Assembly (NCBI RefSeq): GCF_001194135.2
Contig: NC_069002.1
Location: forward strand, 8,809,441 to 8,873,440
From: Octopus bimaculoides
Taxonomy: Eukaryota
Reading direction: 5' to 3'
Length of the DNA stretch: 64,000 nt
Under the pieces are notes generated by a model that worked only from the letters and a program-made list of their open reading frames with translations, was not told the DNA's origin and did no database searches. This document shows, piece by piece, positions 3,480-62,530 of this stretch (positions are counted from its first letter, which is position 1; every line of letters begins with the position of its first letter). The position numbers and the translations under genes are program-made.

Positions 3480-3725
3480 GTATGGATTTATGTATATGTA
3501 TATGCTTGTGTTAATCCGTCATCCCCACCCTTGTCACTTCCCAACCTGTCTTGATTTGTTTATGTCCATATAACATAGTGGTTCGGCAAAAGGAACGATA
3601 GAATACTACAAGACTTTAAAATATGTACTGGGGCCAATTTGTTTGACTGAAACTCTTTTAGGTGATGCTCCAGCATGATCGCAATCCAATGAGTAAAACA
3701 AGTAAAAGATGAAGGATGAAAGACC
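3030..3725 (+). mobile_element. SINE group C, full-length old copy with expanded internal (TA/TG) microsatellite
   Basis: tRNA-like head (gctgtgtgg...gggttcggttcc), ttgggtaagtgt block, ttggtagatggaaactg, microsatellite, then tail ggttcggcaaaagg...gctccagcatga. Confidence 0.8.
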
Positions 3726-4010
3726 TTGACAGTTCTGCATATAAACGTGTACTTAAAAAAGTGGTACAGTCCCCTTTAATGAATGTGTTCCACACAGCAA
3801 AATGTTAGTCCTGATAGACACATTCTTTTATTCTTTTATTCTTTTACTTGCTTCAGTAATTTAAAGGCGGTCTTACAAAAGAAATAATAAGCCCTGTGGT
3901 CGATTCATTCGACTAAACTTGCTCTAGGTGTTGCCACAGCAAGGTCGTAGTCTGACTGAAGCAAGTACAAGAGAGAATTCAAAATTAAAAAAAAGAACAA
4001 CAGTCCTTCC

Positions 4011-4599: not shown

Positions 4600-4612
4600 G
4601 TATGTATATGTG

Positions 4613-4659
<47 letters not shown>

Positions 4660-4661
<2 letters not shown>

Positions 4662-4818
4662 TTTCATTTGTTTCAGTCATTTGACTGCGGCCACGCTGGA
4701 GCACCGCGTTTAGTCGAACAAATCGACCCCATGACTTATTCTTTGTAAGCCTATTACTTATTCTATCGGTCGCTTTTGCCGAACCGTTAAGGTAAGGGGA
4801 CGTGAACACACCAACATC
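4660..4818 (-). mobile_element. SINE group C, 3' half
   Basis: tttgtttcagtcatttgactgcggccacgctggagcaccgc...ttttgccgaaccg. Confidence 0.9.
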
Positions 4819-5290: not shown

Positions 5291-7076
5291 TTTTGTTTCA
5301 ATGATTCATAACTGCAAAATAAATCAAATAAGAAATTTTGAAAAAAAAATAAAATAACGGATAAATTTGATTAAATCCACAAAAAAATGTATCGGAAATA
5401 AACTTATAGAATATAATTTTTCTACTGAAGAACTCATTATTTGTTTGTTTGTTTTTATCTTTAATGAAATAATAACAACAACAATAATAATGATAATAAT
5501 GTTTTTTTTTATGAAACGCTGAAGGTTCACAAATACACGCTGAGGACGGTACAGGACACTACAATACAAATAAAGTGGGATTACAGAATAAGAAAGACGT
5601 GTAAGCAAAAGAATAATAAATAACATCCTAATAATCTAAAGAGGCTGATTTTCCAAGGACTGCGCGTGGAAACCCCACAAGACCACGATCCACCTCATCT
5701 CTAGGGCAAGTGTCCTCGCTTCTTCATTCACTCTCAGTCTAGAAGCGCAATACGTTCACCCACCATGCCTATCCCCTTTCACCCTCACTTTCCTTTTCAA
5801 GTGAAATTTGAAAAATTGATGAGAGCTTGGGGGAAGCGGAAAATACTTGCCCTTAGCCTTTTTAGTCGCCTCCGCCATGCAACTATTTTCGCTGTGACCA
5901 TCAGCCAAAGAAACACTGCTGATAGCACAGGCTTGAGACGTAACAGTGGCGACGAGGATTTCGTAGCTCACACAGCCACTGTATAGTATTGAGATATAAC
6001 AGTGTTTCCTTATATTTATCTGTTTCCCTTTGCTTGTTCCTAATTAATTTTGTAGTCCTACTATTGCTATTTTCTAGTAGTTCTTTATCTATACCAAGCT
6101 TCCGCCACCACTACCTTTTTATGCAAAATAGATATATTCTGTCAGCTTTTGGATGTGAGCTTCTGAAGGCCGTCAGTAATTTCTTGCTTTTCAGTCTAAA
6201 CTTTTTAATTCTCTCGACTTTTAGTCGATTATATTGGAGCTGTAATTTATAACTGGGATGACTAACATATTTGTGAAGTTTTTAATGACAGAGATGATCG
6301 TTAACTGTAAAGAGACAGTGTATGCAGTGAAAATGAGATCTAAATGTTGGTTCTAATGACATAACTTAACGTTGATTTCAATAAAATCGCCCGGAGGTGA
6401 TTATAATGTCACAGCTCTAGGTTTTAGCTGTAATGAAACGGTGTTTATAGTAATGAGAGCTTAGAAGTATTTTTAAAGATACACCTCAAAGGTGGTCGGA
6501 ATTAAATAGTTTAGCAATGGATGTAATGTCTCAAATCTGTATATATATATATATATNNNNNNNNNNNNNNNNNNNNNNNNNNNNNNNNNNNNNNNNNNNN
6601 NNNNNNNNNNNNNNNNNNNNNNNNNNNNNNNNNNNNNNNNNNNNNNNNNNNNNNNNNNNNNNNNNNNNNNNNNNNNNNNNNNNNNNNNNNNNNNNNNNNN
6701 NNNNNNNNNNNNNNNNNNNNNNNNNNNNNNNNNNNNNNNNNNNNNNNNNNNNNNNNNNNNNNNNNNNNNNNNNNNNNNNNNNNNNNNNNNNNNNNNNNNN
6801 NNNNNNNNNNNNNNNNNNNNNNNNNNNNNNNNNNNNNNNNNNNNNNNNNNNNNNNNNNNNNNNNNNNNNNNNNNNNNNNNNNNNNNNNNNNNNNNNNNNN
6901 NNNNNNNNNNNNNNNNNNNNNNNNNNNNNNNNNNNNNNNNNNNNNNNNNNNNNNNNNNNNNNNNNNNNNNNNNNNNNNNNNNNNNNNNNNNNNNNNNNNN
7001 NNNNNNNNNNNNNNNNNNNNNNNNNNNNNNNNNNNNNNNNNNNNNNNNNNNNNNNNNNNNNNNNNNNNNNNNNNNN

Positions 7077-7126: not shown

Positions 7127-7335
7127 TGTGTCGGTTTGTCTCCCCAGCATCGCTTGACAACCGATGCTGTCGTGTTTGCGTCCCCGTAACTTAGCGGTTC
7201 GGCAAAAGAGGACGATAGAATAAGTACAAGGCTTAGAAAGAATAAGCTCTAGGGTCAATTTGCTCGACTATAAAGGCGGTGCTCCAGCATGGCCACAGTC
7301 AAATGACTGAAACAAGTAAAAGAGAGTAAAAGAGA
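7110..7335 (+). mobile_element. SINE group C, 3' half following (TG)n and a gap
   Basis: catcgcttgacaaccgatgc...aaaggcggtgctccagcatggccacagtcaaatgactgaaacaagtaaaaga. Confidence 0.9.
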
Positions 7336-9166
7336 GTATATATATATATATATATATATATGTAAAATTTATGAACACTGTATATATATATGTAGAGGGT
7401 GTTCACAAATTCTCGTTACAGCTTCCGTAATTTATTATATTGTATCGTCTAGACGTGTTGCGTGCAACCAATAAAACCTGTGTCGAATTGTTCTGGTGAT
7501 AACTATACTGTTATCCTTCTGTTTCATTTTTCTCAATTTCTCTATGTATATATGTATGTATGTATGGATGGATGGATGGATGTATACATGCAGATTTGTA
7601 TGTGTTGTTTTATGTATGTCTTCTCATACATATAGTTGTATATCTAGTGTGGTATAGTGAAACTTTATAGCCCTTCCCGTTAAAAAGTGGTAGTATAATT
7701 AAAACAATGTCATATTTTAAACCTGAGAAACGTCTTGCATAGTTCTACTGTGTGCGTCCGTGTGTATAGTTGTGGGTTGTATCGAAACAGTTCAGCGTTA
7801 GATGTATTGAAGTGGCTCAGTGATGGTTGTAATGACACAACGGAGATATGCTTCTTTTTAAATAATTTATTGACGGTTGCAATAACATAGCTCATTAATG
7901 ATTGCCGGAATAACTCCTACATTTGATGGAATAACACAGTTTAAATGTACTAATAACACAACCTCACAACAGCAAGAAAATTGACTTAATCTCTTGTGCT
8001 TTTTTTGTTTGTTTTTTACTCAGGAGTCTCTACTACAAATTGATTTTTGCGCTGAGACTTAAGTAACTGATATTCACAGCCAATGAAATGTACGTAAGAT
8101 GACGTAAGTAAATATTTAAACAAACTTTTCTGCTTTGTTTTACTTTCTATACATACATATATACGTATGTATATATGTATGCATGTATGCATATATATAT
8201 ATNNNNNNNNNNNNNNNNNNNNNNNNNNNNNNNNNNNNNNNNNNNNNNNNNNNNNNNNNNNNNNNNNNNNNNNNNNNNNNNNNNNNNNNNNNNNNNNNNN
8301 NNNNNNNNNNNNNNNNNNNNNNNNNNNNNNNNNNNNNNNNNNNNNNNNNNNNNNNNNNNNNNNNNNNNNNNNNNNNNNNNNNNNNNNNNNNNNNNNNNNN
8401 NNNNNNNNNNNNNNNNNNNNNNNNNNNNNNNNNNNNNNNNNNNNNNNNNNNNNNNNNNNNNNNNNNNNNNNNNNNNNNNNNNNNNNNNNNNNNNNNNNNN
8501 NNNNNNNNNNNNNNNNNNNNNNNNNNNNNNNNNNNNNNNNNNNNNNNNNNNNNNNNNNNNNNNNNNNNNNNNNNNNNNNNNNNNNNNNNNNNNNNNNNNN
8601 NNNNNNNNNNNNNNNNNNNNNNNNNNNNNNNNNNNNNNNNNNNNNNNNNNNNNNNNNNNNNNNNNNNNNNNNNNNNNNNNNNNNNNNNNNNNNNNNNNNN
8701 NNNNNNNNNNNNNNNNNNNNNNNNNNNNNNNNNNNNNNNNNNNNNNNNNNNNNNNNNNNNNNNNNNNNNNNNNNNNNNNNNNNNNNNNNNNNNNNNNNNN
8801 NNNNNNNNNNNNNNNNNNNNNNNNNNNNNNNNNNNNNNNNNNNNNNNNNNNNNNNNNNNNNNNNNNNNNNNNNNNNNNNNNNNNNNNNNNNNNNNNNNNN
8901 NNNNNNNNNNNNNNNNNNNNNNNNNNNNNNNNNNNNNNNNNNNNNNNNNNNNNNNNNNNNNNNNNNNNNNNNNNNNNNNNNNNNNNNNNNNNNNNNNNNN
9001 NNNNNNNNNNNNNNNNNNNNNNNNNNNNNNNNNNNNNNNNNNNNNNNNNNNNNNNNNNNNNNNNNNNNNNNNNNNNNNNNNNNNNNNNNNNNNNNNNNNN
9101 NNNNNNNNNNNNNNNNNNNNNNNNNNNNNNNNNNNNNNNNNNNNNNNNNATATATATACGTATGCA

Positions 9167-15479: not shown

Positions 15480-15756
15480 ATTATCTTTTATCCTTTACAT
15501 CTTATTTGTTTCGATCACTGGACTGCGGCCATGCTGGGGCATAGCTCTGAGTCAAAGTTGACTTCACAATGTTAAGAACTCAGAGCGAATAAAACCGGAA
15601 CGATTATTGCAAAGCAATCCATCGACCGCTCTGGTGCCTCCACCAATTGCTCATCTATTTGTCAGTTAAACGTTGCATTGTTCCTATCTTTTAATCTTTT
15701 ATTTTTACTTGGTTAAGTGATGGACCTATGAAATATTGAAGTCCTAGATATATATC

Positions 15757-19880: not shown

Positions 19881-20078
19881 TATATATATNNNNNNNNNNN
19901 NNNNNNNNNNNNNNNNNNNNNNNNNNNNNNNNNNNNNNNNNNNNNNNNNNNNNNNNNNNNNNNNNNNNNNNNNNNNNNNNNNNNNNNNNNNNNNNNNNNN
20001 NNNNNNNNNNNNNNNNNNNNNNNNNNNNNNNNNNNNNNNNNNNNNNNNNNNNNNNNNNNNNNNNNNNNNNNNNNNNNN

Positions 20079-21139: not shown

Positions 21140-22128
21140 GTGGCCGCTCAGATCGCCACCCCTGCTAGCTATGCAAATGACACAAAAGTTTCTCAGACGA
21201 TACAAACTTCTGGAAATATTGCGGATCTACAACGGGAGGCGGACGCAATATACATTTGGGCAGAGGACAACAACATGCAGTTTAATGCAGGAAAATTCCA
21301 GGCCCTAAGTTACTAGCACAGAAAGCTAAACGACATGCAGACAAAATACACTGGCCCGAGAGGAATTGCAATCCCTGAATCAAAAACAGTGCGTGACCTG
21401 GGCATTGACATGAGCAATGATACATCTTTTCAAGTGCATATTACCAATTTGGTAACAAAATGCAGACGGCTGGATGGATAGATCCTCCGAACTTTCAAAA
21501 CGCGAGAAAAGGAGATATTGATGATCCTTTGGGGGACATACGTCCTCAGCCGCTTGGACTACTGCTCCCAGCTATGATCACCACTTCGGAGCTCGAAGCA
21601 ATCCAACGAAGCTACACTAAGAAAATCGTCTCCATGCAACGTATCAGTTATTGGGGAAGACTGAAAGAATTAAAGCTCTTCTCCCGAGAACGAAGGCGGG
21701 GAAGATATGCTGTGATATACATCTGGAAAATCCTAGAAGGCCTTGTATCAAACTTTGGCATTGAAGATTACTCAAACTGCAGAATGCGGCGCCACTGCAT
21801 AGTGCCAAAGATCCCAGCATTACCATCCAAATACAGAACCAGGTACTGTAACAGCTTGGGCTTCAAGGGCCCACAGTCTTTCAATATCCATCCAAAATGC
21901 CTGAGAGACTTGTATGGTGTGGATGTAGGTGTCTTCAAAACAAAACTGGATCCCCCTCCTGTCAAAGGTTCCGGATGAGCCTACCTCAAGGTAGGAAACA
22001 CAGATGAGGGCAGTGGCATCAAACTCCCTCATTGACCAAATGCCATATATCAGAGGAGGTTTCAAATAATGGCGTAGCTCAGTCAACTGTGGTGCCCCAA
22101 CACGACCGCAGCTTTGAACCTGAAACAG
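21140..22128 (+). mobile_element. 5'-truncated CR1/L2-type LINE: ORF2 reverse transcriptase C-terminal half, with stops and frameshifts
   Basis: SYANDTK (YADD motif, 21170-21181), LQREADAIYIWAEDNNMQFNAGKF, VRDLGI, LSRLDYCSQL*SP, LEAIQR, ERRRGRYAVIYIWKI, VPDEP, SNSLIDQ; stop at 22067-22069; 60-bp 3' UTR. Confidence 0.92.
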
Positions 22129-23099
22129 TTTAAAAAATTAACGAATTAAAATATTATTCTATAAACATTTGATATCTTATTTAATATCAGGAACCTATCA
22201 ATGATGATCTCAGTCGCCACAGTCTCAAGATATGATATAATATATGTAAACCCATATAATAGATATATAAACAGGGTTAATTCAGGTGTTTCTCTGTCAA
22301 TTGAAAAATGGTGAACAACCTTCAATCGATCCTCGAAATTTACTAGCTTCGCATCCTGAGGTGTATAGGACGTGACGTTAACCTCTCTGTGCAAAATATT
22401 GTGAAACGAAATCGGAAGACTTGTTAGCATTTTACATCCGTTATCGTACATTTTTGGTGATAGGAATAAACAAACTCGGTTGTTTTGAAATTAAATTCAA
22501 TCAAAAAATATTTAAATTAGATTAAAATGCATTATTCAGATGTTAAGTAATTACTTTTTGAAATTATTAACATAAAAACAAATTATTTTGTATCAAACTT
22601 TGTATAAAATTATTCTAAATGAATTGTTTTGCATTAAAATGAATAAATAACATATCTAACTGGTTTTTAGCTACAATAACTGTGGGTGAGAATATATTCA
22701 GACATTAAATGTGATGTAAATACGAAACTAAAAACATAATGAACATGATTTTTATTCATGAGAGTTGTGCGAAGCCATAAGTCACTGTTTATACAAACTA
22801 ATTGGAACATCTTTTTATTTTAAATTAACAATAAACATACATAAAAGCGTTAGCTTAGAAACATCGAGAAAATGTAATAACATTTTTACCAACGCTACGA
22901 AACTTAAAACGATAGCTTCAAACTGTGCTTGGCCAAAATTAGCTTCTTTGCTGAGAAAGACTTTCGTCGTGGCTATCTCAAAGATCGACACAGTAATTTT
23001 TATTTTGCTTTTTTATAAACGTGAAGAACAAAAATATCATACCCGTAGATAAGAGGCTGAATTTGAAGCATATATATATTACATACATACATACATATG

Positions 23100-39403: not shown

Positions 39404-39696
39404 TGTGGTGGCTTTTGTGTGTCAAAGACCCTGAGGGCTGTGCTGGCGGAGGGAAAGCTAAGAATAGAGGCCTGACTAATATGGACCACTTTTTCATTAA
39501 GGTTAAAAGGAGTTTTCGGAAAGGGACACTCCTCCTACCGAGAGAAAAAGAAACAAGCAAACTTACAGAAGTTTTGATGACATTTCAAAACCAACAAGTC
39601 TTGGGTGACTTGGAACTGAAAAGGTTTTCTCTCAGGGTGACTTGGAACCCAAAAAGGGGGCGGGTGGAAGAGATGCTCTACAGACCGATAGAATAA
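39404..39696 (+). CDS. Candidate downstream exon, product unknown
   Basis: ctgttcttcttgcag acceptor 150 bp after the donor; phase-compatible and open (WWLLCVKDPEGC...), ending inside a SINE C tail. Confidence 0.22.
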
Positions 39697-39987
39697 GTAG
39701 CAAACTTTTTTTAAATAATTAGTACTGAGAAGGTTCATTTCAAGCAACATCCCTTCAAGACGGTGCTATAGCATGGCCGCAATCCAGCGACTGAAGTTAA
39801 AGATGATACTGCTATCATTTCCAACTCTCCCTATTCCTCTCGTCTCCGTTTACATGCAAAGCAGAAGGAGTTACTTGATAGCTTCGTATCTTGTCTATAG
39901 ACGCAACAAAATCGCTGAAGGCGAAATACGAACCGCTGACCTTTCTGCTGGTAATCCGGTCACCTAAACACTGCACCACCATCAAGC

Positions 39988-41178: not shown

Positions 41179-41567
41179 TTGGTTGTTGGCACTCCGTCGC
41201 TTACGACGTCGAGGGTTCCAGTTGATCCGATCAACGGAACAGTCTGCTCGTGAAATTAACGTGCAAGTGGCTGAGCACTCCACAGACACGTGTAACCCTT
41301 AACGTAGTTCTCGGGGATATTCAGCGTGACACAGTGTGTGACAAGGCTGACCGTTTGAATTACAGGCACAACAGAAACAGGAAGTAAGAGTGAGAGAAAG
41401 TTGTGGTGGAAGAGTACAGAAGGGTTCGCCACCATCCACTGCCGGAGCCTCGTAGAACTTTAGGTGTTTTCGCTCAATAAGCACTCACAACGCCCGGTCT
41501 GGGAATCGAAACCGCAATCCTATGACCGCGAATCCGCTGCCCTAACCACTGGGCCATTGCGCCTCCA
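41179..41567 (-). mobile_element. SINE group A, full length, 13-bp TSD
   Basis: Head gtggaggcgcaatggcccagtggttaggg...ggtttcgattccc; TSD ctattctctatat (41166-78) / ctattctccatat (41568-80). Confidence 0.93.
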
Positions 41568-41701
41568 CTATTCTCCATATAGCGCGACTTAAAGCCTAAG
41601 AATAAACAATTCTTTTTTCACTAATTGCATTTTATTTTACTTTTAATGTGTTCCGTTGTTTGGATATTTTTCCTGAAATTGGTTCTTCAGTTTTTCTCAA
41701 A

Positions 41702-45729: not shown

Positions 45730-46270
45730 GTTTGGACTGAACCATTATTGCAACATAATATTTCACTACATAATGGCCTAAACCATCATTGTAATGGAAT
45801 AATTCACTATGTAACGGACTAAACTACTATCGTAATGTAAATAATTGCCCATATAATGGACTGAACCATTATTGTCATGTACGAGTTCACTATATAATGG
45901 ACTGAACTATTACTGTCACGTAAGAGTACACTAGTACACTAGTGAAGGCGCGTGGCCTAGTGGTTAGGCTTTTGTACTCACGATCGCTAGATCGTGGGTT
46001 CGATTCCCTGATTAGCCGGCACGTTATGTCCTTGAGCAAAACACTCCATTTCACGTTGCTCCCCCTTTCGATCACCGGGGAAAGTTGGCCTGCTCGTCTA
46101 GCCAACAGGGTGGTATCATCTGAAGGCTAAACCGATACAAAAACGCATTGTGACCAACATATGATAGCCCGGTCGGTCACGTGATCACCTAAATAGTACA
46201 CTATACAACCTACTAAACCATTATTATAATGCAATAGTTGGCTATATAATCGACTAAACAGCTTAGTTGA
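45730..46270. repeat. About 41-bp minisatellite (about 7 degenerate units) interrupted by a SINE
   Basis: Unit approximately tggactgaaccattattgtaatgtaatagttcactatataa. Confidence 0.8.
45942..46193 (+). mobile_element. CORE-type SINE with tail F, 10-bp TSD
   Basis: gtgaaggcgcgtggcctagtggttagg...gggttcgattccc, tccttgagcaaaacactccatttcacgttgctcc; TSD TAGTACACTA at 45932-41 and 46194-203. Confidence 0.9.
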
Positions 46271-47889: not shown

Positions 47890-48265
47890 GTTGTTGTTGT
47901 TGTCACTCCGTCGCTTATGACGTCGAGGGTTCCAGTTGATCCGATCAACGGAAATTAACGTGCAAGCGGCTGAGCACTCCACAGACACGTGTACGCTTAA
48001 TGTAGTTCTCGGGGATATTCAGCGTGACACAGTGTGACAAGTCTGGTCCCTTTGAATTACAGGCACAACAGAAACAGGAAGTAAGAGTGAGAGAAAGTTG
48101 TGGTGAGAGAGTACAGCAGGGTTCGCCACCATCCCCTGCCGGAGCCTCGTGGAGCTTTAGGTGTTTTCGCTCAATAAACACTCACAACGTCCGGTCTGGG
48201 AATCGAAACGGCGATCCTATGACCGCGAGTCCGCTGCCCTAACCACTGGGCCACTGCGCCTCCAC
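47890..48265 (-). mobile_element. SINE group A, full length, 11-bp TSD
   Basis: TSD caagcataatc (47879-89) / caagtataatc (48266-76); small internal deletion in the tail. Confidence 0.92.
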
Positions 48266-51064: not shown

Positions 51065-51529
51065 AGCCAGTTTTTTAATATCAATTTACTTTTGTGCGTT
51101 CAGCATGATGTGTTCTCATTCTGCTTGTTTAGAGTGAAAACGTTTTGAGTAATTCTATTTTCTTCTTGTTTGTTTTGCTGTATAGGGAGATATTCTAGAT
51201 CGATTTACGTACGGCAATGCACGGTCAATCATTTCTCATTTTTATAATATGTTTGCAATGATGTGGCATTCTTTAAGCTCCCTGGACAAGGACATTGCAT
51301 TCATTACTTGATAGGGTATGACATAAGGTCAAACAGACAGACAGACAAGCAGACAGCTAGAGAAACCCAGCGCTTAGTATATAAAATAGGTTGTCATCAG
51401 AATGCTACTCAAACATCATTACACACACATATCTATATGCACGCATGCATATACATATCTCAATATGTATATAAATATCCGAATATGTGTATAAATGAAT
51501 GTATATACAGTAATGCCTCGATATACTTA

Positions 51530-51670
51530 GCGCTTCGGCAAAAAGAGACCGATAGAATAGTACTACGCTTATGAAAAATAAGTCCTGGGTCGATTTCTAC
51601 GTCCAAAGGCGGAGCTCCAGCATGGCCGCAGTCAAATGACTGAAACAAGTAAAAGAATAAAAGAATATAT
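51530..51670 (+). mobile_element. SINE group C, 3' part
   Basis: ttcggcaaaaagagaccgatagaat...gctccagcatggccgcagtcaaatgactgaaacaagtaaaaga. Confidence 0.88.
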
Positions 51671-54328: not shown

Positions 54329-54577
54329 GTAGAAAACAAACAGATGTATTAGTATANNNNNNNNNNNNNNNNNNNNNNNNNNNNNNNNNNNNNNNNNNNN
54401 NNNNNNNNNNNNNNNNNNNNNNNNNNNNNNNNNNNNNNNNNNNNNNNNNNNNNNNNNNNNNNNNNNNNNNNNNNNNNNNNNNNNNNNNNNNNNNNNNNNN
54501 NNNNNNNNNNNNNNNNNNNNNNNNNNNNNNNNNNNNNNNNNNNNNNNNNNNNNNNNNNNNNNNNNNNNNNNNNNNNN

Positions 54578-57183: not shown

Positions 57184-57228
<45 letters not shown>

Positions 57229-57264
57229 TAAGGCATTGAGCACTTATTCTCATTCGATATTTAC

Positions 57265-57630
57265 GTGTGGGGGTGGCTGTATAATAAGAAGTTTGCTTCC
57301 CAACAACATCGTTCCGGGTTCAGTCCCACATCGTGGAACCTTGTTCAAATGTCTTTTACTATTGCCTCACGTCGACCAAATCCTTGTGCGTCGAATTGGT
57401 GGACTATAGCGGAAAGAACCCTGTCATATATACATACGTGTGTGCCTGTTTCTTTGTGTCTATATTTGTCCCCTATCACTGCTTTGTGTGCTTATGTCTC
57501 TGTTACTTCACGGTTCGGCAAAAGGAACCGATAGAGTAAGTACCAGGTTTTAAAGATTAAGCACTTCACTTTATTCTTTCGACTAAAATTCTTCAACTCG
57601 CTGCCCCTACATGGCCGTTGTCTTATGACG
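57265..57630 (+). mobile_element. SINE group C, full length, diverged
   Basis: Head, short internal microsatellite and tail are collinear with 25508-25868. Confidence 0.75.
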
Positions 57631-57717
57631 CTCACACACACACACACACACATGTATATATTAACACAAGAAAGACGACAGACAGACAGATGACAGACAA
57701 ACAGATAGATAGATAGG

Positions 57718-58435: not shown

Positions 58436-59634
58436 ATACTGGTTTGTTTATATCCCGGTAACTAAGCTGTGCAGCAAAAGACAACGACAGAATAAGAACC
58501 AGACTTTCAAAAAAAACTTCTGGGGTCGATTTGTTNNNNNNNNNNNNNNNNNNNNNNNNNNNNNNNNNNNNNNNNNNNNNNNNNNNNNNNNNNNNNNNNN
58601 NNNNNNNNNNNNNNNNNNNNNNNNNNNNNNNNNNNNNNNNNNNNNNNNNNNNNNNNNNNNNNNNNNNNNNNNNNNNNNNNNNNNNNNNNNNNNNNNNNNN
58701 NNNNNNNNNNNNNNNNNNNNNNNNNNNNNNNNNNNNNNNNNNNNNNNNNNNNNNNNNNNNNNNNNNNNNNNNNNNNNNNNNNNNNNNNNNNNNNNNNNNN
58801 NNNNNNNNNNNNNNNNNNNNNNNNNNNNNNNNNNNNNNNNNNNNNNNNNNNNNNNNNNNNNNNNNNNNNNNNNNNNNNNNNNNNNNNNNNNNNNNNNNNN
58901 NNNNNNNNNNNNNNNNNNNNNNNNNNNNNNNNNNNNNNNNNNNNNNNNNNNNNNNNNNNNNNNNNNNNNNNNNNNNNNNNNNNNNNNNNNNNNNNNNNNN
59001 NNNNNNNNNNNNNNNNNNNNNNNNNNNNNNNNNNNNNNNNNNNNNNNNNNNNNNNNNNNNNNNNNNNNNNNNNNNNNNNNNNNNNNNNNNNNNNNNNNNN
59101 NNNNNNNNNNNNNNNNNNNNNNNNNNNNNNNNNNNNNNNNNNNNNNNNNNNNNNNNNNNNNNNNNNNNNNNNNNNNNNNNNNNNNNNNNNNNNNNNNNNN
59201 NNNNNNNNNNNNNNNNNNNNNNNNNNNNNNNNNNNNNNNNNNNNNNNNNNNNNNNNNNNNNNNNNNNNNNNNNNNNNNNNNNNNNNNNNNNNNNNNNNNN
59301 NNNNNNNNNNNNNNNNNNNNNNNNNNNNNNNNNNNNNNNNNNNNNNNNNNNNNNNNNNNNNNNNNNNNNNNNNNNNNNNNNNNNNNNNNNNNNNNNNNNN
59401 NNNNNNNNNNNNNNNNNNNNNNNNNNNNNNNNNNNNNNNNNNNNNNNNNNNNNNNNNNNNNNNNNNNNNNNNNNNNNTTATTATTATTATTATTATTAAT
59501 AAATAATAACAATAATAATGTGGCTAGCAAGCATTAAAGCCAAAAAGGAAAATTTATAAATTTATAATTAATTATTAATTATAATTGTACCCTCAATTAT
59601 AATTAATAATTAATTATAAATTTATATATATATT

Positions 59635-61178: not shown

Positions 61179-61209
61179 CCCCAGTCTATGCTGAAGCGAA
61201 ATTATATCT

Positions 61210-61630
61210 TTCAACTTTTATTTGTTTCAGGCATTGGACTACGGCCAATCTGAGGCACCTTCTTGAAGGGTTTTAGTCGAACAGATCGATTTCAGTACGT
61301 CTATAATTATCCTGGAGATTAGTTTGGTAATTATCCTATCGGTATGTTTTGCCGAACTGCTAAGTTACGGGGTCGTAAACGAACAAACATCGGTTATAAA
61401 GCGATGGAGGTGGGGTAAACACAAGCACAAAGTCACACATAATTAAATGTACAAGATTGGGTTCCACACAGTCTCCGTCTACCAATTTCACTCACAAGAC
61501 AATGGTCGGCTTGTAGAAAAAAAACTATAGAAGAAAACATTTGCCCAACAAGCCGCGCAGCGGGACAGAACCCGGACCTATGTGGTTACAAGCGAGCTTC
61601 TTAGCCACACCACCATGCTTACGCCTATAT
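61210..61630 (-). mobile_element. SINE group C, full length, diverged, microsatellite barely expanded
   Basis: Tail tttgtttcaggcattggactacggcc through head gggacagaacccggacctatgtggtt. Confidence 0.8.
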
Positions 61631-62324
61631 AAACATTTGGTTTTTTGGGGGGTTTTTTTTTTTGGTTTTTTTGTTTGTTTGTTTTGGTCTTTTTCCAGCA
61701 GAGAAGATCAGATAGCGTTTGAAGTTAAATGGTAATTTTTTTTTCCCAGAATTCCTTGTTAGTACAATTCAATACGCCCACGCATATCTTTTGTTTGTCA
61801 TTTAGAATCTGTTTTGCAATGGAAACTGTAAAAAAAATATTAAGATCACCGAAGAATTTAAGCGTTAAAATTCATCTTTTATAAAACAAACAGATTTCAA
61901 AAAAAAAAAATATTTAAATTCGCTTAAAAATAAATACTAGCAAAATAAGTTTTAAAATTTTCTCCAGCACCACACGCGTTTATAATACAAGAAACAGGAA
62001 ACTAAAATCGGCATTAATATTCAATGTTTAAATTAAAACTCAGATTGCATTATTTCAATTTTTTAAAGCAAGATGCAAATTATGAAAACAATGTCGTTCA
62101 TTTGGAAATTTCATACCGAAAAATATTCCCTTGTGCCAGTTTTTACACTTTTCCTAAAAATATAAACCACATTGTAATATTGTAAAATATTGTATAATAT
62201 TGGTTTAGAATTACGCTAGATGATTCCGCATGATTCTTCCGTAAAATTCATTTTACAAGCAAAATAGTAATGTTTTTTTCTGATCTTTTAATCTTTTTCT
62301 GTTTTTTGGGGTTTTTTTTTTTTT

Positions 62325-62530
62325 GTTATTGGCCTGCGGCCATACCGGAGCATCGACTTGAAAGGTTTAGTCAAGCAAAGCTTAAGTTTCTTTTTACAAG
62401 TCTGGTACTTTGATACATACTTTTGCACTCTCCTTTGCCGACTTGCTATGTTGTGTCGAAGGGATGTAATCAAACCAACACTGGTTGTCAAGTGCTAATG
62501 GAAACAAAGATACACACACACAAACACATA
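62325..62530 (-). mobile_element. SINE group C, 3' half, diverged
   Basis: ctgcggccataccggagcatc, ctggttgtcaagtg. Confidence 0.65.

What the first reader, a model, noticed from the sequence alone, without database searches (positions are those of the whole stretch)
22085..22128. The LINE 3' end matches the 3' tail of SINE group C: a candidate LINE-SINE partnership
Seen: the LINE ends GGTGCCCCAACACGACCGCAG-ctttgaac-CTGAAACA. SINE C copies (7278-7314, 25818-25854, 36370-36406, 51611-51646, 4670-4710 minus) end GGTGC(T/C)CCAGCATGGCCGCAG-tcaaatga-CTGAAACA. That is 17-18 of 21 matches (all differences transitions), the same 8-nt spacer, then 8 of 8. Both can form a stem (ctgtggt/accgcag in the LINE; gcggt/gccgc in the SINE). 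Known: CR1/L2-clade LINEs mobilise SINEs that share their 3' stem-loop (e.g. eel UnaL2/UnaSINE1). Inference: this LINE family or a close relative drove the most abundant SINE in the window.
Basis: partly seen in the sequence, partly recalled or inferred. Interest (0 to 1): 0.72.

Follow-up and report, generated by a model that had tools for sequence, protein, structure and literature searches.

The report
Octopus LINE and SINE share tail
A decayed copy of a CR1-like jumping gene in this octopus-type genome ends in the same roughly 55-base, two-hairpin tail as the window's commonest short repeat, which fits the known way that short repeats borrow a long element's copying enzyme and names a likely driver of the octopus SINE expansion.

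Summary
Window 22091-22127 matches the SINE C tail consensus at 25/37 positions (17/21, 8-nt gap, 8/8). None of 200 Markov-simulated windows reached 25.

The block is the LINE's own 3' end, not a stray SINE fragment. Ten contigs from elsewhere, including Argonauta hians and a copy with an intact 954-aa EN+RT ORF2, carry the same tail just after the ORF. A covariance model built only from six of those external LINE tails picks out five young SINE C tails (46-60 bits), the window LINE tail (45 bits) and six older SINE C tails. Nothing else in the window has E below 0.1.

The tail ends in AAAC(A) plus octamer repeats that are also shared.

Tail identity among LINE lineages averages 89%, against 68% for coding DNA. 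The window's LINE lineage has the most diverged tail, so a sister lineage (L004/L009 type) is the likelier driver.

This is a new example of a known kind, the stringent LINE/SINE tail partnership. CR1 clade membership was not tested by phylogeny, and mobilisation is inferred.

The parts
21143..22077 (+). 5'-truncated, decayed ORF2 remnant of the LINE. It runs from the YADD-box region (here YANDTKV) of the RT through the C-terminal domain. There are frameshifts near 21583 and 21952 and several in-frame stops.
   Evidence: Six-frame reading. tblastn of P0001-P0004 gives 52-67% identity in three frame segments, 21143-22057. blastn is collinear with L001 at 70%.
22083..22127 (+). LINE 3' tail. HP1 spans 22087-22108 (outer stem 22087-22090 with 22105-22108; inner stem 22092-22095 with 22100-22103; loop 22096-22099). 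HP2 spans 22109-22122 (CAGCU/ACCUG, one C.C mismatch). AAACA is at 22123-22127.
   Evidence: Model R1, built only from six external LINE tails, scores 45 bits, E 4e-12, at 22083-22140. Column mapping comes from alignment A1.
22128..22151 (+). Three degenerate octamer units (GTTTAAAA AATTAACG AATTAAAA), the LINE's terminal microsatellite. The exact end is uncertain.
   Evidence: Read directly. Compare (AATTAAAG)2 in L011 and (ATTTAAAG)3 in L012 of the same lineage.
7270..7328 (+). Tail of a young SINE C copy (body 7140-7324).
   Evidence: R1 60.4 bits, E 3.5e-17. nhmmer E 1.4e-60. JC 0.09.
25510..25866 (+). Full composite SINE: tRNA-like head with CORE-like unit (25510-25650), internal (TG)n, C body, and tail at 25810-25866.
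   Evidence: R1 57.8 bits.
36363..36420 (+). Tail of a young SINE C copy (body 36229-36418).
   Evidence: R1 46 bits, E 2e-12..
51603..51660 (+). Tail of a 5'-truncated young SINE C copy (51525-51658). Its terminal AGTAAAAGAATAAAAGAATA is identical to that of LINE L009.
   Evidence: R1 58.7 bits..
4656..4712 (-). Tail of a 5'-truncated young SINE C copy (4658-4818).
   Evidence: R1 51.1 bits..
61205..61620 (-). Old full composite SINE, with head, CORE-like unit, unexpanded TG-rich linker, C body, and tail at 61210-61264.
   Evidence: R1 23.6 bits, E 5e-5. JC 0.22.
57275..57629 (+). Third composite SINE copy (head 57275-57459, C body 57483-57629). Old, with a degraded tail.
3656..3713 (+). Tail of an old SINE C copy (3524-3711).
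   Evidence: R1 35.7 bits, E 5e-9.
15494..15551 (-). Tail of an old SINE C-related copy.
   Evidence: R1 23.5 bits..
39754..39806 (+). Tail of an old SINE C copy (39681-39803).
   Evidence: R1 22 bits, E 1.6e-4.
3922..3976 (+). Tail of an old SINE C copy (3873-3972).
   Evidence: R1 20.7 bits.
62281..62362 (-). Tail region of an old SINE C copy (62321-62501).
   Evidence: R1 16.5 bits, E 0.011..

Best explanation
Window 21143-22151 is a 5'-truncated, mutated copy of an octopod LINE. The element has an APE endonuclease and a reverse transcriptase in one ORF2, and its organisation is CR1-like.

Its short 3' UTR is a conserved module with four parts:
- Hairpin 1: (U)GGY.GUGC-NCCA-GCAU.GRCC(A).
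- Hairpin 2, directly abutting hairpin 1: CAGYC, a loop of 3-8 nt, then GRCUG.
- AAAC(A).
- One to three copies of an A-rich octamer, such as AATAAAAG.

The window's commonest SINE is a composite: a tRNA-like head, a CORE-like unit, an internal (TG)n, a ~135-nt body and a tail. Its last ~55 nt are a homologous copy of that module.

The most likely mechanism is the stringent type of 3'-end recognition. The LINE's RT binds the hairpin module of its own RNA and primes on the terminal repeats at a nicked target. SINE RNA carrying the same module is copied in trans.

What is shown: homology of the tails, that the tail belongs to the LINE family, that the tail is conserved above coding DNA, and that both stems covary.

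What is inferred: that the RT binds this module, and that this LINE family moved the SINE. The driver was probably an L004/L009-like lineage rather than the window copy's own lineage.
For: Tail belongs to the LINE family:
- The tail follows ORF2 in L001, L002 (Argonauta hians), L003, L004, L008, L009, L011 and L012-14.
- The window LINE is collinear with L001 through the tail.

Tail homology between LINE and SINE:
- Model R1, made only from six external LINE tails, finds in the window five young SINE C tails (46-60 bits), the LINE tail (45 bits) and six older SINE C tails. Nothing else has E below 0.1.
- In the reverse direction, a SINE C profile hits the LINE tails of L001-L004, L008 and L009 over profile positions 132-187 only.
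- The terminal repeats are shared. SINE 51611 and LINE L009 both read AGTAAAAGAATAAAAGAATA.

Conservation:
- The tail 21-mer averages 89% identity among LINE lineages, against 68% for the neighbouring coding DNA.

Structure:
- The same two-hairpin MFE is predicted independently for L001-L004 and the SINE consensus, with z -2.1 to -4.0, and by RNAalifold.
- At lineage level, 93% of cells are paired against 20-47% when partners are slid.
- Four pairs show changes on both sides, and 0 of 500 shuffles reach the observed covariation score.
- HP2 pair 4 is U-A in the SINE and C-G in the LINEs. The HP1 pair is C-G, U-A or U.G.

Element type and specificity:
- An intact 954-aa ORF2 with Exo_endo_phos and RVT_1 exists in L011.
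- A second SINE family in the window has a different tail, so the match is specific to SINE C.
Against: - There is no experimental evidence of binding or trans-mobilisation.
- The window has only one LINE copy, and its tail is the most diverged: 17/21, one broken pair in each hairpin, and z only -1.3.
- The covariation rests on nine lineage-level sequences, and the tested structure was derived from the same sequences.
- No target-site duplications were found that would tie the insertion signatures of LINE and SINE together.
- LINE and SINE ages could not be compared without genome-wide consensus sequences.
- The RT clade (CR1 versus L2 or others) was not placed by phylogeny.
- The source species of most external contigs is unknown. 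They are 'metagenome' or read-assembly contigs.
Confidence: 0.78

Rival explanations
1. Coincidental juxtaposition: a severely 5'-truncated SINE C copy (tail only) landed right behind an unrelated LINE fragment.
For: SINE C is very abundant, with at least 16 copies in 54 kb of sequenced bases. 5'-truncated copies exist.
Against: The same block sits after the ORF in ten independent contigs from other samples, representing about five lineages besides the window's, with no SINE body upstream. The alignment with L001 is collinear through the tail. The window's tail shares lineage-specific pre-tail sequence and its octamer type with L012.
Confidence: 0.02
2. The tails are homologous, but the direction or the driver differs. 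Either the LINE lineages acquired the module from the SINE, or both took it from a third element. Alternatively, another LINE that carries the same module, not sampled here, is the real engine.
For: Tail exchange between LINEs and SINEs is known in general (PMC5786205). The SINE's HP2 stem (CAGUC/GACUG) is not found in any sampled LINE. Only a handful of LINE copies were sampled.
Against: The module is present in LINE lineages that are only 62-75% identical in coding DNA. That suggests the module is older than the oldest SINE C copies seen here (JC about 0.3). A more distant LINE relative (47% aa identity) lacks it. No other LINE-like sequence in the window carries it.
Confidence: 0.12
3. The shared block is conserved for a host or RNA-level function unrelated to retrotransposition, such as a processing or stability signal, and the SINE is moved by another LINE through its terminal A-rich repeats alone.
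For: The terminal repeats are A/T-rich and are often followed by (TA)n. RTE, Dong and L1-Tx1 elements are also recently active in octopus (PMC13282606, PMC9115989).
Against: The block sits at the extreme 3' end of both elements, directly before the terminal repeats. That is where stringent-type LINEs carry their RT recognition hairpin (PMC3747384, PMC8665684). The stems are conserved while the HP2 loop varies freely in sequence and length, which is typical of a structural recognition element.
Confidence: 0.05

Closest known systems
UnaL2 / UnaSINE1 of the eel (L2 clade): the experimentally proven stringent LINE/SINE pair
   Same: The SINE's 3' ~50-60 nt are homologous to the LINE's 3' end. A conserved stem-loop lies just upstream of short terminal tandem repeats. 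There is no poly(A). (PMC3747384 for the system.)
   Different: Here there are two abutting hairpins rather than one described stem-loop. The terminal repeat is an A-rich octamer rather than TGTAA. The C-terminal protein motif looks CR1-like rather than L2-like, though that rests on memory only. Nothing has been tested experimentally.
Amniote CR1 LINEs and their SINE partners (for example the tortoise Pol III SINE with CR1)
   Same: EN and RT lie in a single ORF. The 3' structure is a hairpin plus an approximately 8-bp microsatellite thought to be the RT recognition site (PMC8665684). Copies are heavily 5'-truncated, and no clear target-site duplications are seen.
   Different: The octamer is AATAAAAG, AATTAAAG or ATTAAAAC rather than ATTCTRTG. 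The tail sequence is unrelated. The host is an octopod mollusc. RT phylogeny was not done.
Octopus SINEs OK / OR1 / OR2 (Ohshima & Okada 1994), annotated today as 'tRNA-Core' or 'tRNA-Deu'
   Same: This is an abundant octopus SINE with a tRNA-like head and the CORE-type CCTTGGG motif (PMC4824008, PMC4758252, PMC8967140, PMC5786205).
   Different: I could not obtain the OK/OR1/OR2 consensus sequences, so identity with any of them is untested. None of the held papers names a LINE partner or a LINE-derived tail for octopus SINEs.

Membership tests
LINE/SINE pair with a common 3' tail (stringent type) | The SINE's 3' end is homologous to the LINE's 3' end. | tested here: met
   The LINE-only model R1 finds SINE tails at 46-60 bits. 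The SINE profile finds LINE tails at E 7.7e-10 to 1.3e-4.
LINE/SINE pair with a common 3' tail (stringent type) | The tail is an integral part of the LINE family, not an insertion. | tested here: met
   Ten external contigs, representing about five LINE lineages besides the window's, carry it after ORF2. The alignment is collinear. The tail is more conserved than the ORF, 89% against 68%.
LINE/SINE pair with a common 3' tail (stringent type) | A conserved stem-loop with compensatory changes lies in the tail. | tested here: met
   Cells are 93% paired against 20-47% when slid, and four pairs show changes on both sides. This is computational only and rests on nine lineages.
LINE/SINE pair with a common 3' tail (stringent type) | LINE and SINE have the same terminal repeats. 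| tested here: met
   AGTAAAAGAATAAAAGAATA occurs in both SINE 51611 and LINE L009. L004 has a closely similar end, GGTTAAAAGAATAAAAGAATAT.
LINE/SINE pair with a common 3' tail (stringent type) | The LINE's proteins mobilise the SINE in trans through the tail. | not testable with these tools
   This needs a retrotransposition assay.
LINE/SINE pair with a common 3' tail (stringent type) | The activity periods overlap within the same genome. | tested here: inconclusive
   Both elements occur in the window. SINE copies fall in two age classes, JC 0.04-0.10 and 0.22-0.32. The LINE's age cannot be estimated from one copy.
CR1 clade of non-LTR retrotransposons | APE endonuclease and RT lie in a single ORF. 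| tested here: met
   P0237 in L011 is 954 aa with Exo_endo_phos, Exo_endo_phos_2 and RVT_1. The same domains are found in Argonauta L002. The window copy keeps only the RT C-terminal half.
CR1 clade of non-LTR retrotransposons | The 3' end has a hairpin followed by an approximately 8-bp microsatellite (PMC8665684). | tested here: met
   Two hairpins plus octamer units. The octamer sequence differs from the amniote ATTCTRTG.
CR1 clade of non-LTR retrotransposons | The RT domain falls within the CR1 clade in a phylogeny. | not tested
   No reference LINE RT set was available. The only lead is the C-terminal motif ...LSYWERLRELKLYSLERRR..., which I remember as CR1-like.
L2 clade (UnaL2-like) | Terminal TGTAA-type repeats and an L2-type RT and C-terminus. 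| tested here: not met
   The terminal repeats are A-rich octamers, not TGTAA. RT phylogeny was not done, so L2 is not formally excluded.
tRNA-derived CORE-SINE | A tRNA-related pol III head. | tested here: inconclusive
   ARAGORN and Rfam call no tRNA. By eye there is a box-B-like GGTTCAGTCC in the head.
tRNA-derived CORE-SINE | The CORE-type central motif CCTTGGG... | tested here: met
   CCTTGGGCAAGTGTCTT with up to 3 mismatches occurs six times in the window, five of them within SINE head units, against 0.1 expected. The motif is described in PMC5786205.

The most novel reading that the evidence does not exclude
One CR1-like LINE family may have fed the octopod-specific SINE expansion through both published bursts (JC about 0.2 and about 0.09). 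It would have done so through a two-hairpin 3' module that is conserved across LINE lineages only 62-75% identical in coding DNA. This pairing appears not to have been described. It may still be live, because copies with an intact ORF2 exist and CR1 and SINE insertions are reported as recently active in O. vulgaris.
Probability: 0.45. Interest if true: 0.55.

Novelty: new member of a known kind. Interest (0 to 1): 0.45.

Why it matters
SINEs are the largest repeat class in Octopus genomes. One annotation puts them at about 40% of the repeat content (PMC8967140) and another at 11.6% of the O. vulgaris genome (PMC13282606). Their expansion is often invoked in discussions of cephalopod genome novelty.

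In the papers I could search, these SINEs are labelled only 'tRNA-Core', 'tRNA-Deu' or 'unclassified'. None names an autonomous partner. The search for active octopus LINEs has focused on RTE and Dong elements (PMC9115989).

A defined tail module and a defined LINE family would help in several ways:
- They give a concrete, testable candidate for the engine of the expansion.
- They give a way to classify the 'unclassified' SINEs by tail.
- They provide a 58-position model for annotating 3'-anchored copies.

Conceptually this is a further example of a well-established mechanism, not a new one.

Tried and rejected
- Metagenome DNA scan: searching JGI metagenome contigs for the tail pattern returned only two GC-rich bacterial chance matches, L006 and L007.
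- Unavailable sources: the SINEBase supplementary consensus sequences (OK/OR1/OR2 and the CR1/L2 tail alignments) are not held. Albertin 2015 is not held.
- tRNA detection: ARAGORN and Rfam (gathering, then permissive) found no tRNA or other family in the SINE heads or anywhere in the window.
- Target-site duplications: none of 7 nt or more was found around two full SINE copies or the LINE. The (ACAG)n on both sides of the copy at 57275 is ambiguous.
- Contigs without a tail: L005 (P0110) and L010 (P0140, chimeric) do not reach a tail. P0139 has no contig on record.
- Pfam: no family for the window ORF 21460-21978 and none for the putative ORF1 fragment of L011.
- In-window blastn: the LINE fragment matches nothing else in the window. 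The SINE profile misses the window LINE tail at E below 0.01. Only the structure-aware model and the external LINE copies made that link solid.
I rejected it as the conserved fold in favour of the fold.
- CpG decay as an explanation of the HP1 C-G/U-A switch: rejected for the 3' partner, because that G is preceded by G, not C (alignments).

Full report
**1. What is in the window**

The window is a gap-rich draft eukaryotic assembly with 27 N runs and 9,678 N. Its repeats are octopod in character. The best named protein relative of the LINE is from Argonauta hians. A second SINE family in the window recurs at 89% identity beside a LINE copy in an external contig.

At 21143-22077 there is a 5'-truncated remnant of a non-LTR retrotransposon ORF2. 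It begins at the RT's YADD box (here YANDTKV) and runs through the C-terminal domain. It has two frameshifts, near 21583 and 21952, and several stops.

The block is therefore essentially the whole 3' UTR.

**2. The observation**

Against the SINE consensus 37-mer, the LINE site scores 25/37: 17/21 with all four differences transitions, then 0/8 in the gap, then 8/8. In 200 Markov simulations of the window, the best score on either strand was 20-24 and never 25.

**3. The block is the LINE's own tail**

Two protein searches and the contigs encoding the hits gave ten further contigs whose sequence reaches past the ORF:
- L001, L004, L008 and L011, from ENA 'metagenome' contigs.
- L002, from the Argonauta hians genome.
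- L003, from ENA.
- L009, from NCBI GCA_024449705.1.
- L012-14, from Logan read assemblies.

All ten carry the block at the same place.

The window LINE aligns collinearly with L001 at 70% identity from the RT through the tail. L012-14 share the window copy's lineage-specific pre-tail sequence (...GGTTTCAAATAAT..CAGTCAAC..), so they belong to the window copy's own lineage.

L011 has an intact 954-aa ORF2 with Exo_endo_phos, Exo_endo_phos_2 and RVT_1. The Argonauta copy has the same domains, broken by frameshifts.

A relative from another organism with 47% amino-acid identity (L015) ends differently and is not hit by the tail model.

Among the LINE lineages, coding DNA just upstream averages 68% identity, whereas the tail 21-mer averages 89%. 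Among the non-window copies the 21-mer is 86-100% identical.

**4. A non-circular test of the LINE-SINE link**

I built a covariance model, R1, from six external LINE tails only. It contains no window sequence and no SINE. I then searched the whole window with filters off. The hits, in order, were:
- Five young SINE C tails at 46-60 bits, E 2e-12 to 3.5e-17.
- The window LINE tail at 45 bits, E 4e-12.
- Six older SINE C tails, E 5e-9 to 0.011.
- Nothing else with E below 0.1.

In the reverse direction, a profile of the SINE's 3' half hits the LINE contigs only over its last ~55 positions. The elements share only the tail, not the SINE body.

**5. Anatomy of the tail**

Independent MFE folds of L001-L004 and of the SINE consensus all give the same structure (z -2.1 to -4.0). 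RNAalifold agrees.

- Hairpin 1: an outer stem (U)GGY/GRCC(A), a 1x1 G.G internal loop, an inner stem GUGC/GCAU, and a loop NCCA.
The stem is CAGYC/GRCUG. The loop varies freely in sequence and length: TGCG, ACT, AACTC, ATAT, GTAAACTA, and AAAT or CAAT in the SINE.
- Then AAAC(A).
- Then one to three A-rich octamers: AATAAAAG in L004, L009 and the SINE; AATTAAAG in L008 and L011; ATTAAAAC in L002 and L003; ATTTAAAG in L012.

At the level of seven LINE lineages plus the young and old SINE consensus sequences:
- 93% of cells are paired, against 20-47% when partners are slid by 1 to 3 columns.
- Four pairs show changes on both sides.
- 0 of 500 shuffles reach the observed covariation score.

The two clearest covarying pairs are these. 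HP2 pair 4 is U-A in the SINE and C-G in the LINEs. The innermost pair of the HP1 outer stem is C-G in four lineages, U-A in three and U.G in one. The 3' partner of that HP1 pair is not in a CpG context, so methylation decay alone does not explain the switch.

It is the MFE only for the window copy, where a G-to-A change breaks the inner stem.

These statistics rest on few sequences, and on a structure derived from those same sequences. They support a conserved fold but do not prove one.

**6. What 'SINE C' is**

Wherever its 5' end is complete, it is preceded by (TG)n.

Three times it lies collinear, in the same orientation, with a tRNA-like head plus a unit carrying the CORE-type motif CCTTGGGCAAGTGTCTT. 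These are at 25510-25866, at 61620-61205 on the minus strand, and at 57275-57629.

I therefore read it as the 3' half of a composite SINE of roughly 350-420 nt whose internal (TG)n expands. Many copies are 5'-truncated, as expected for LINE-mediated copying.

ARAGORN and Rfam do not call the head a tRNA, so 'tRNA-derived' remains a visual judgement.

The copies fall into two age classes: JC 0.04-0.10 for six copies and 0.22-0.32 for ten. These resemble the bursts reported for octopus at JC about 0.09 and about 0.2 (PMC13282606). Both classes keep the tail. They differ in the HP2 loop, which is AAAT in the young class and CAAT in the old one.

**7. Which LINE lineage**

The SINE's 21-mer matches the LINE lineages as follows:
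- L004: 20/21.
- L001, L003, L008 and L009: 19/21.
- L002: 18/21.
- The window copy: 17/21.

Its terminal AGTAAAAGAATAAAAGAATA is identical to that of L009. The window copy's lineage (with L012-14) scores lowest with R1, at 37-45 bits against 70-79 for the others. No sampled LINE has the SINE's CAGUC/GACUG stem.

The likely driver is therefore a sister lineage of this family, not the lineage represented in the window.

**8. Mechanism and comparison with what is known**

The arrangement is a short 3' UTR with a hairpin module and a terminal short tandem repeat, shared by a LINE and a SINE. That defines the 'stringent' LINE/SINE partnership reviewed in PMC3747384 and proven for UnaL2/UnaSINE1.

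EN and RT in one ORF, together with a hairpin and an approximately 8-bp microsatellite, is also the hallmark given for CR1 (PMC8665684).

I infer that the RT binds the two-hairpin module and primes on the octamer repeats, and that SINE RNA is copied in trans.

Assignment to the CR1 clade rests on the element's organisation and on a C-terminal motif recalled from memory. RT phylogeny was not done.

**9. Novelty**

In six full-text searches and the papers I read, octopus SINEs are classed only as tRNA-Core, tRNA-Deu or unclassified. No LINE partner or LINE-derived tail is named. Ohshima's 2013 review of LINE/SINE pairs never mentions octopus.

Repbase or Dfam entries, or papers not held in this library, may already record the pair.

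This is a new member of a well-known kind. It is useful for cephalopod repeat biology but not conceptually surprising.

Noticed in passing
window 41195-41568 (-), 47900-48265 (-), 27421-27492 (-), 45953-46011 (+); L011 3464-3538: A second SINE family with a clearly tRNA-like head (GGAGGCGCAATGGCCCAGTGGTTAGGG...GGTTTCGATTCCC). It has a ~370-nt body ending in ...GGAGTGCCAACAAC(AAC)n and an approximately 14-nt target-site duplication (ATATGGAGAATAG/ATATAGAGAATAG). Its tail is different and gets no R1 hit, so it presumably has a different LINE partner. Its head recurs at 89% identity beside the LINE in contig L011.
   Followed up: partly
window N runs at 6557-7076, 19890-20078, 26647-27169, 29089-29867, 54357-54577, 58536-59477: At least six of the 27 assembly gaps abut the composite SINE, usually at its internal (TG)n. 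That microsatellite evidently breaks the assembly, and this also hides many head-to-body junctions.
   Followed up: partly
protein P0139: A 94-aa protein that is 70% identical to the LINE's C-terminus is deposited at NCBI and UniRef as 'hypothetical protein, partial [Escherichia coli]'. This is almost certainly eukaryotic (octopod) contamination in a bacterial record.
   Followed up: no
L001, L004, L008, L010, L011 (ENA 'METAG' scaffolds COWA16-1 and XUSH22-1); L005, L012-14 (Logan SRR118693xx): Octopod LINE copies, and in L011 an octopod SINE, turn up in assemblies labelled as metagenomes. They are presumably host or prey DNA. The species could not be identified with these tools.
   Followed up: no
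window 7329-7362, 51661-51670, 4600-4655; L001 1773-1815; L008 and L009 after the tail: Both SINE and LINE copies are often followed directly by a (TA)n microsatellite after the octamer ...AAAAGAATA. This could be a shared target preference, or it could be expansion seeded by the tail's terminal AATA. I did not resolve which.
   Followed up: no
L002 34-1540: Upstream of the Argonauta LINE lie two ORFs (218 and 238 aa) of another retroelement. One has a weak zf-RVT match. They are unrelated to the finding.
   Followed up: no
window 57200-57230 and 57675-57700: (ACAG)n lies on both sides of the old composite SINE copy at 57275-57629. This could be a long target-site duplication, or the SINE may have inserted into a microsatellite.
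   Followed up: no
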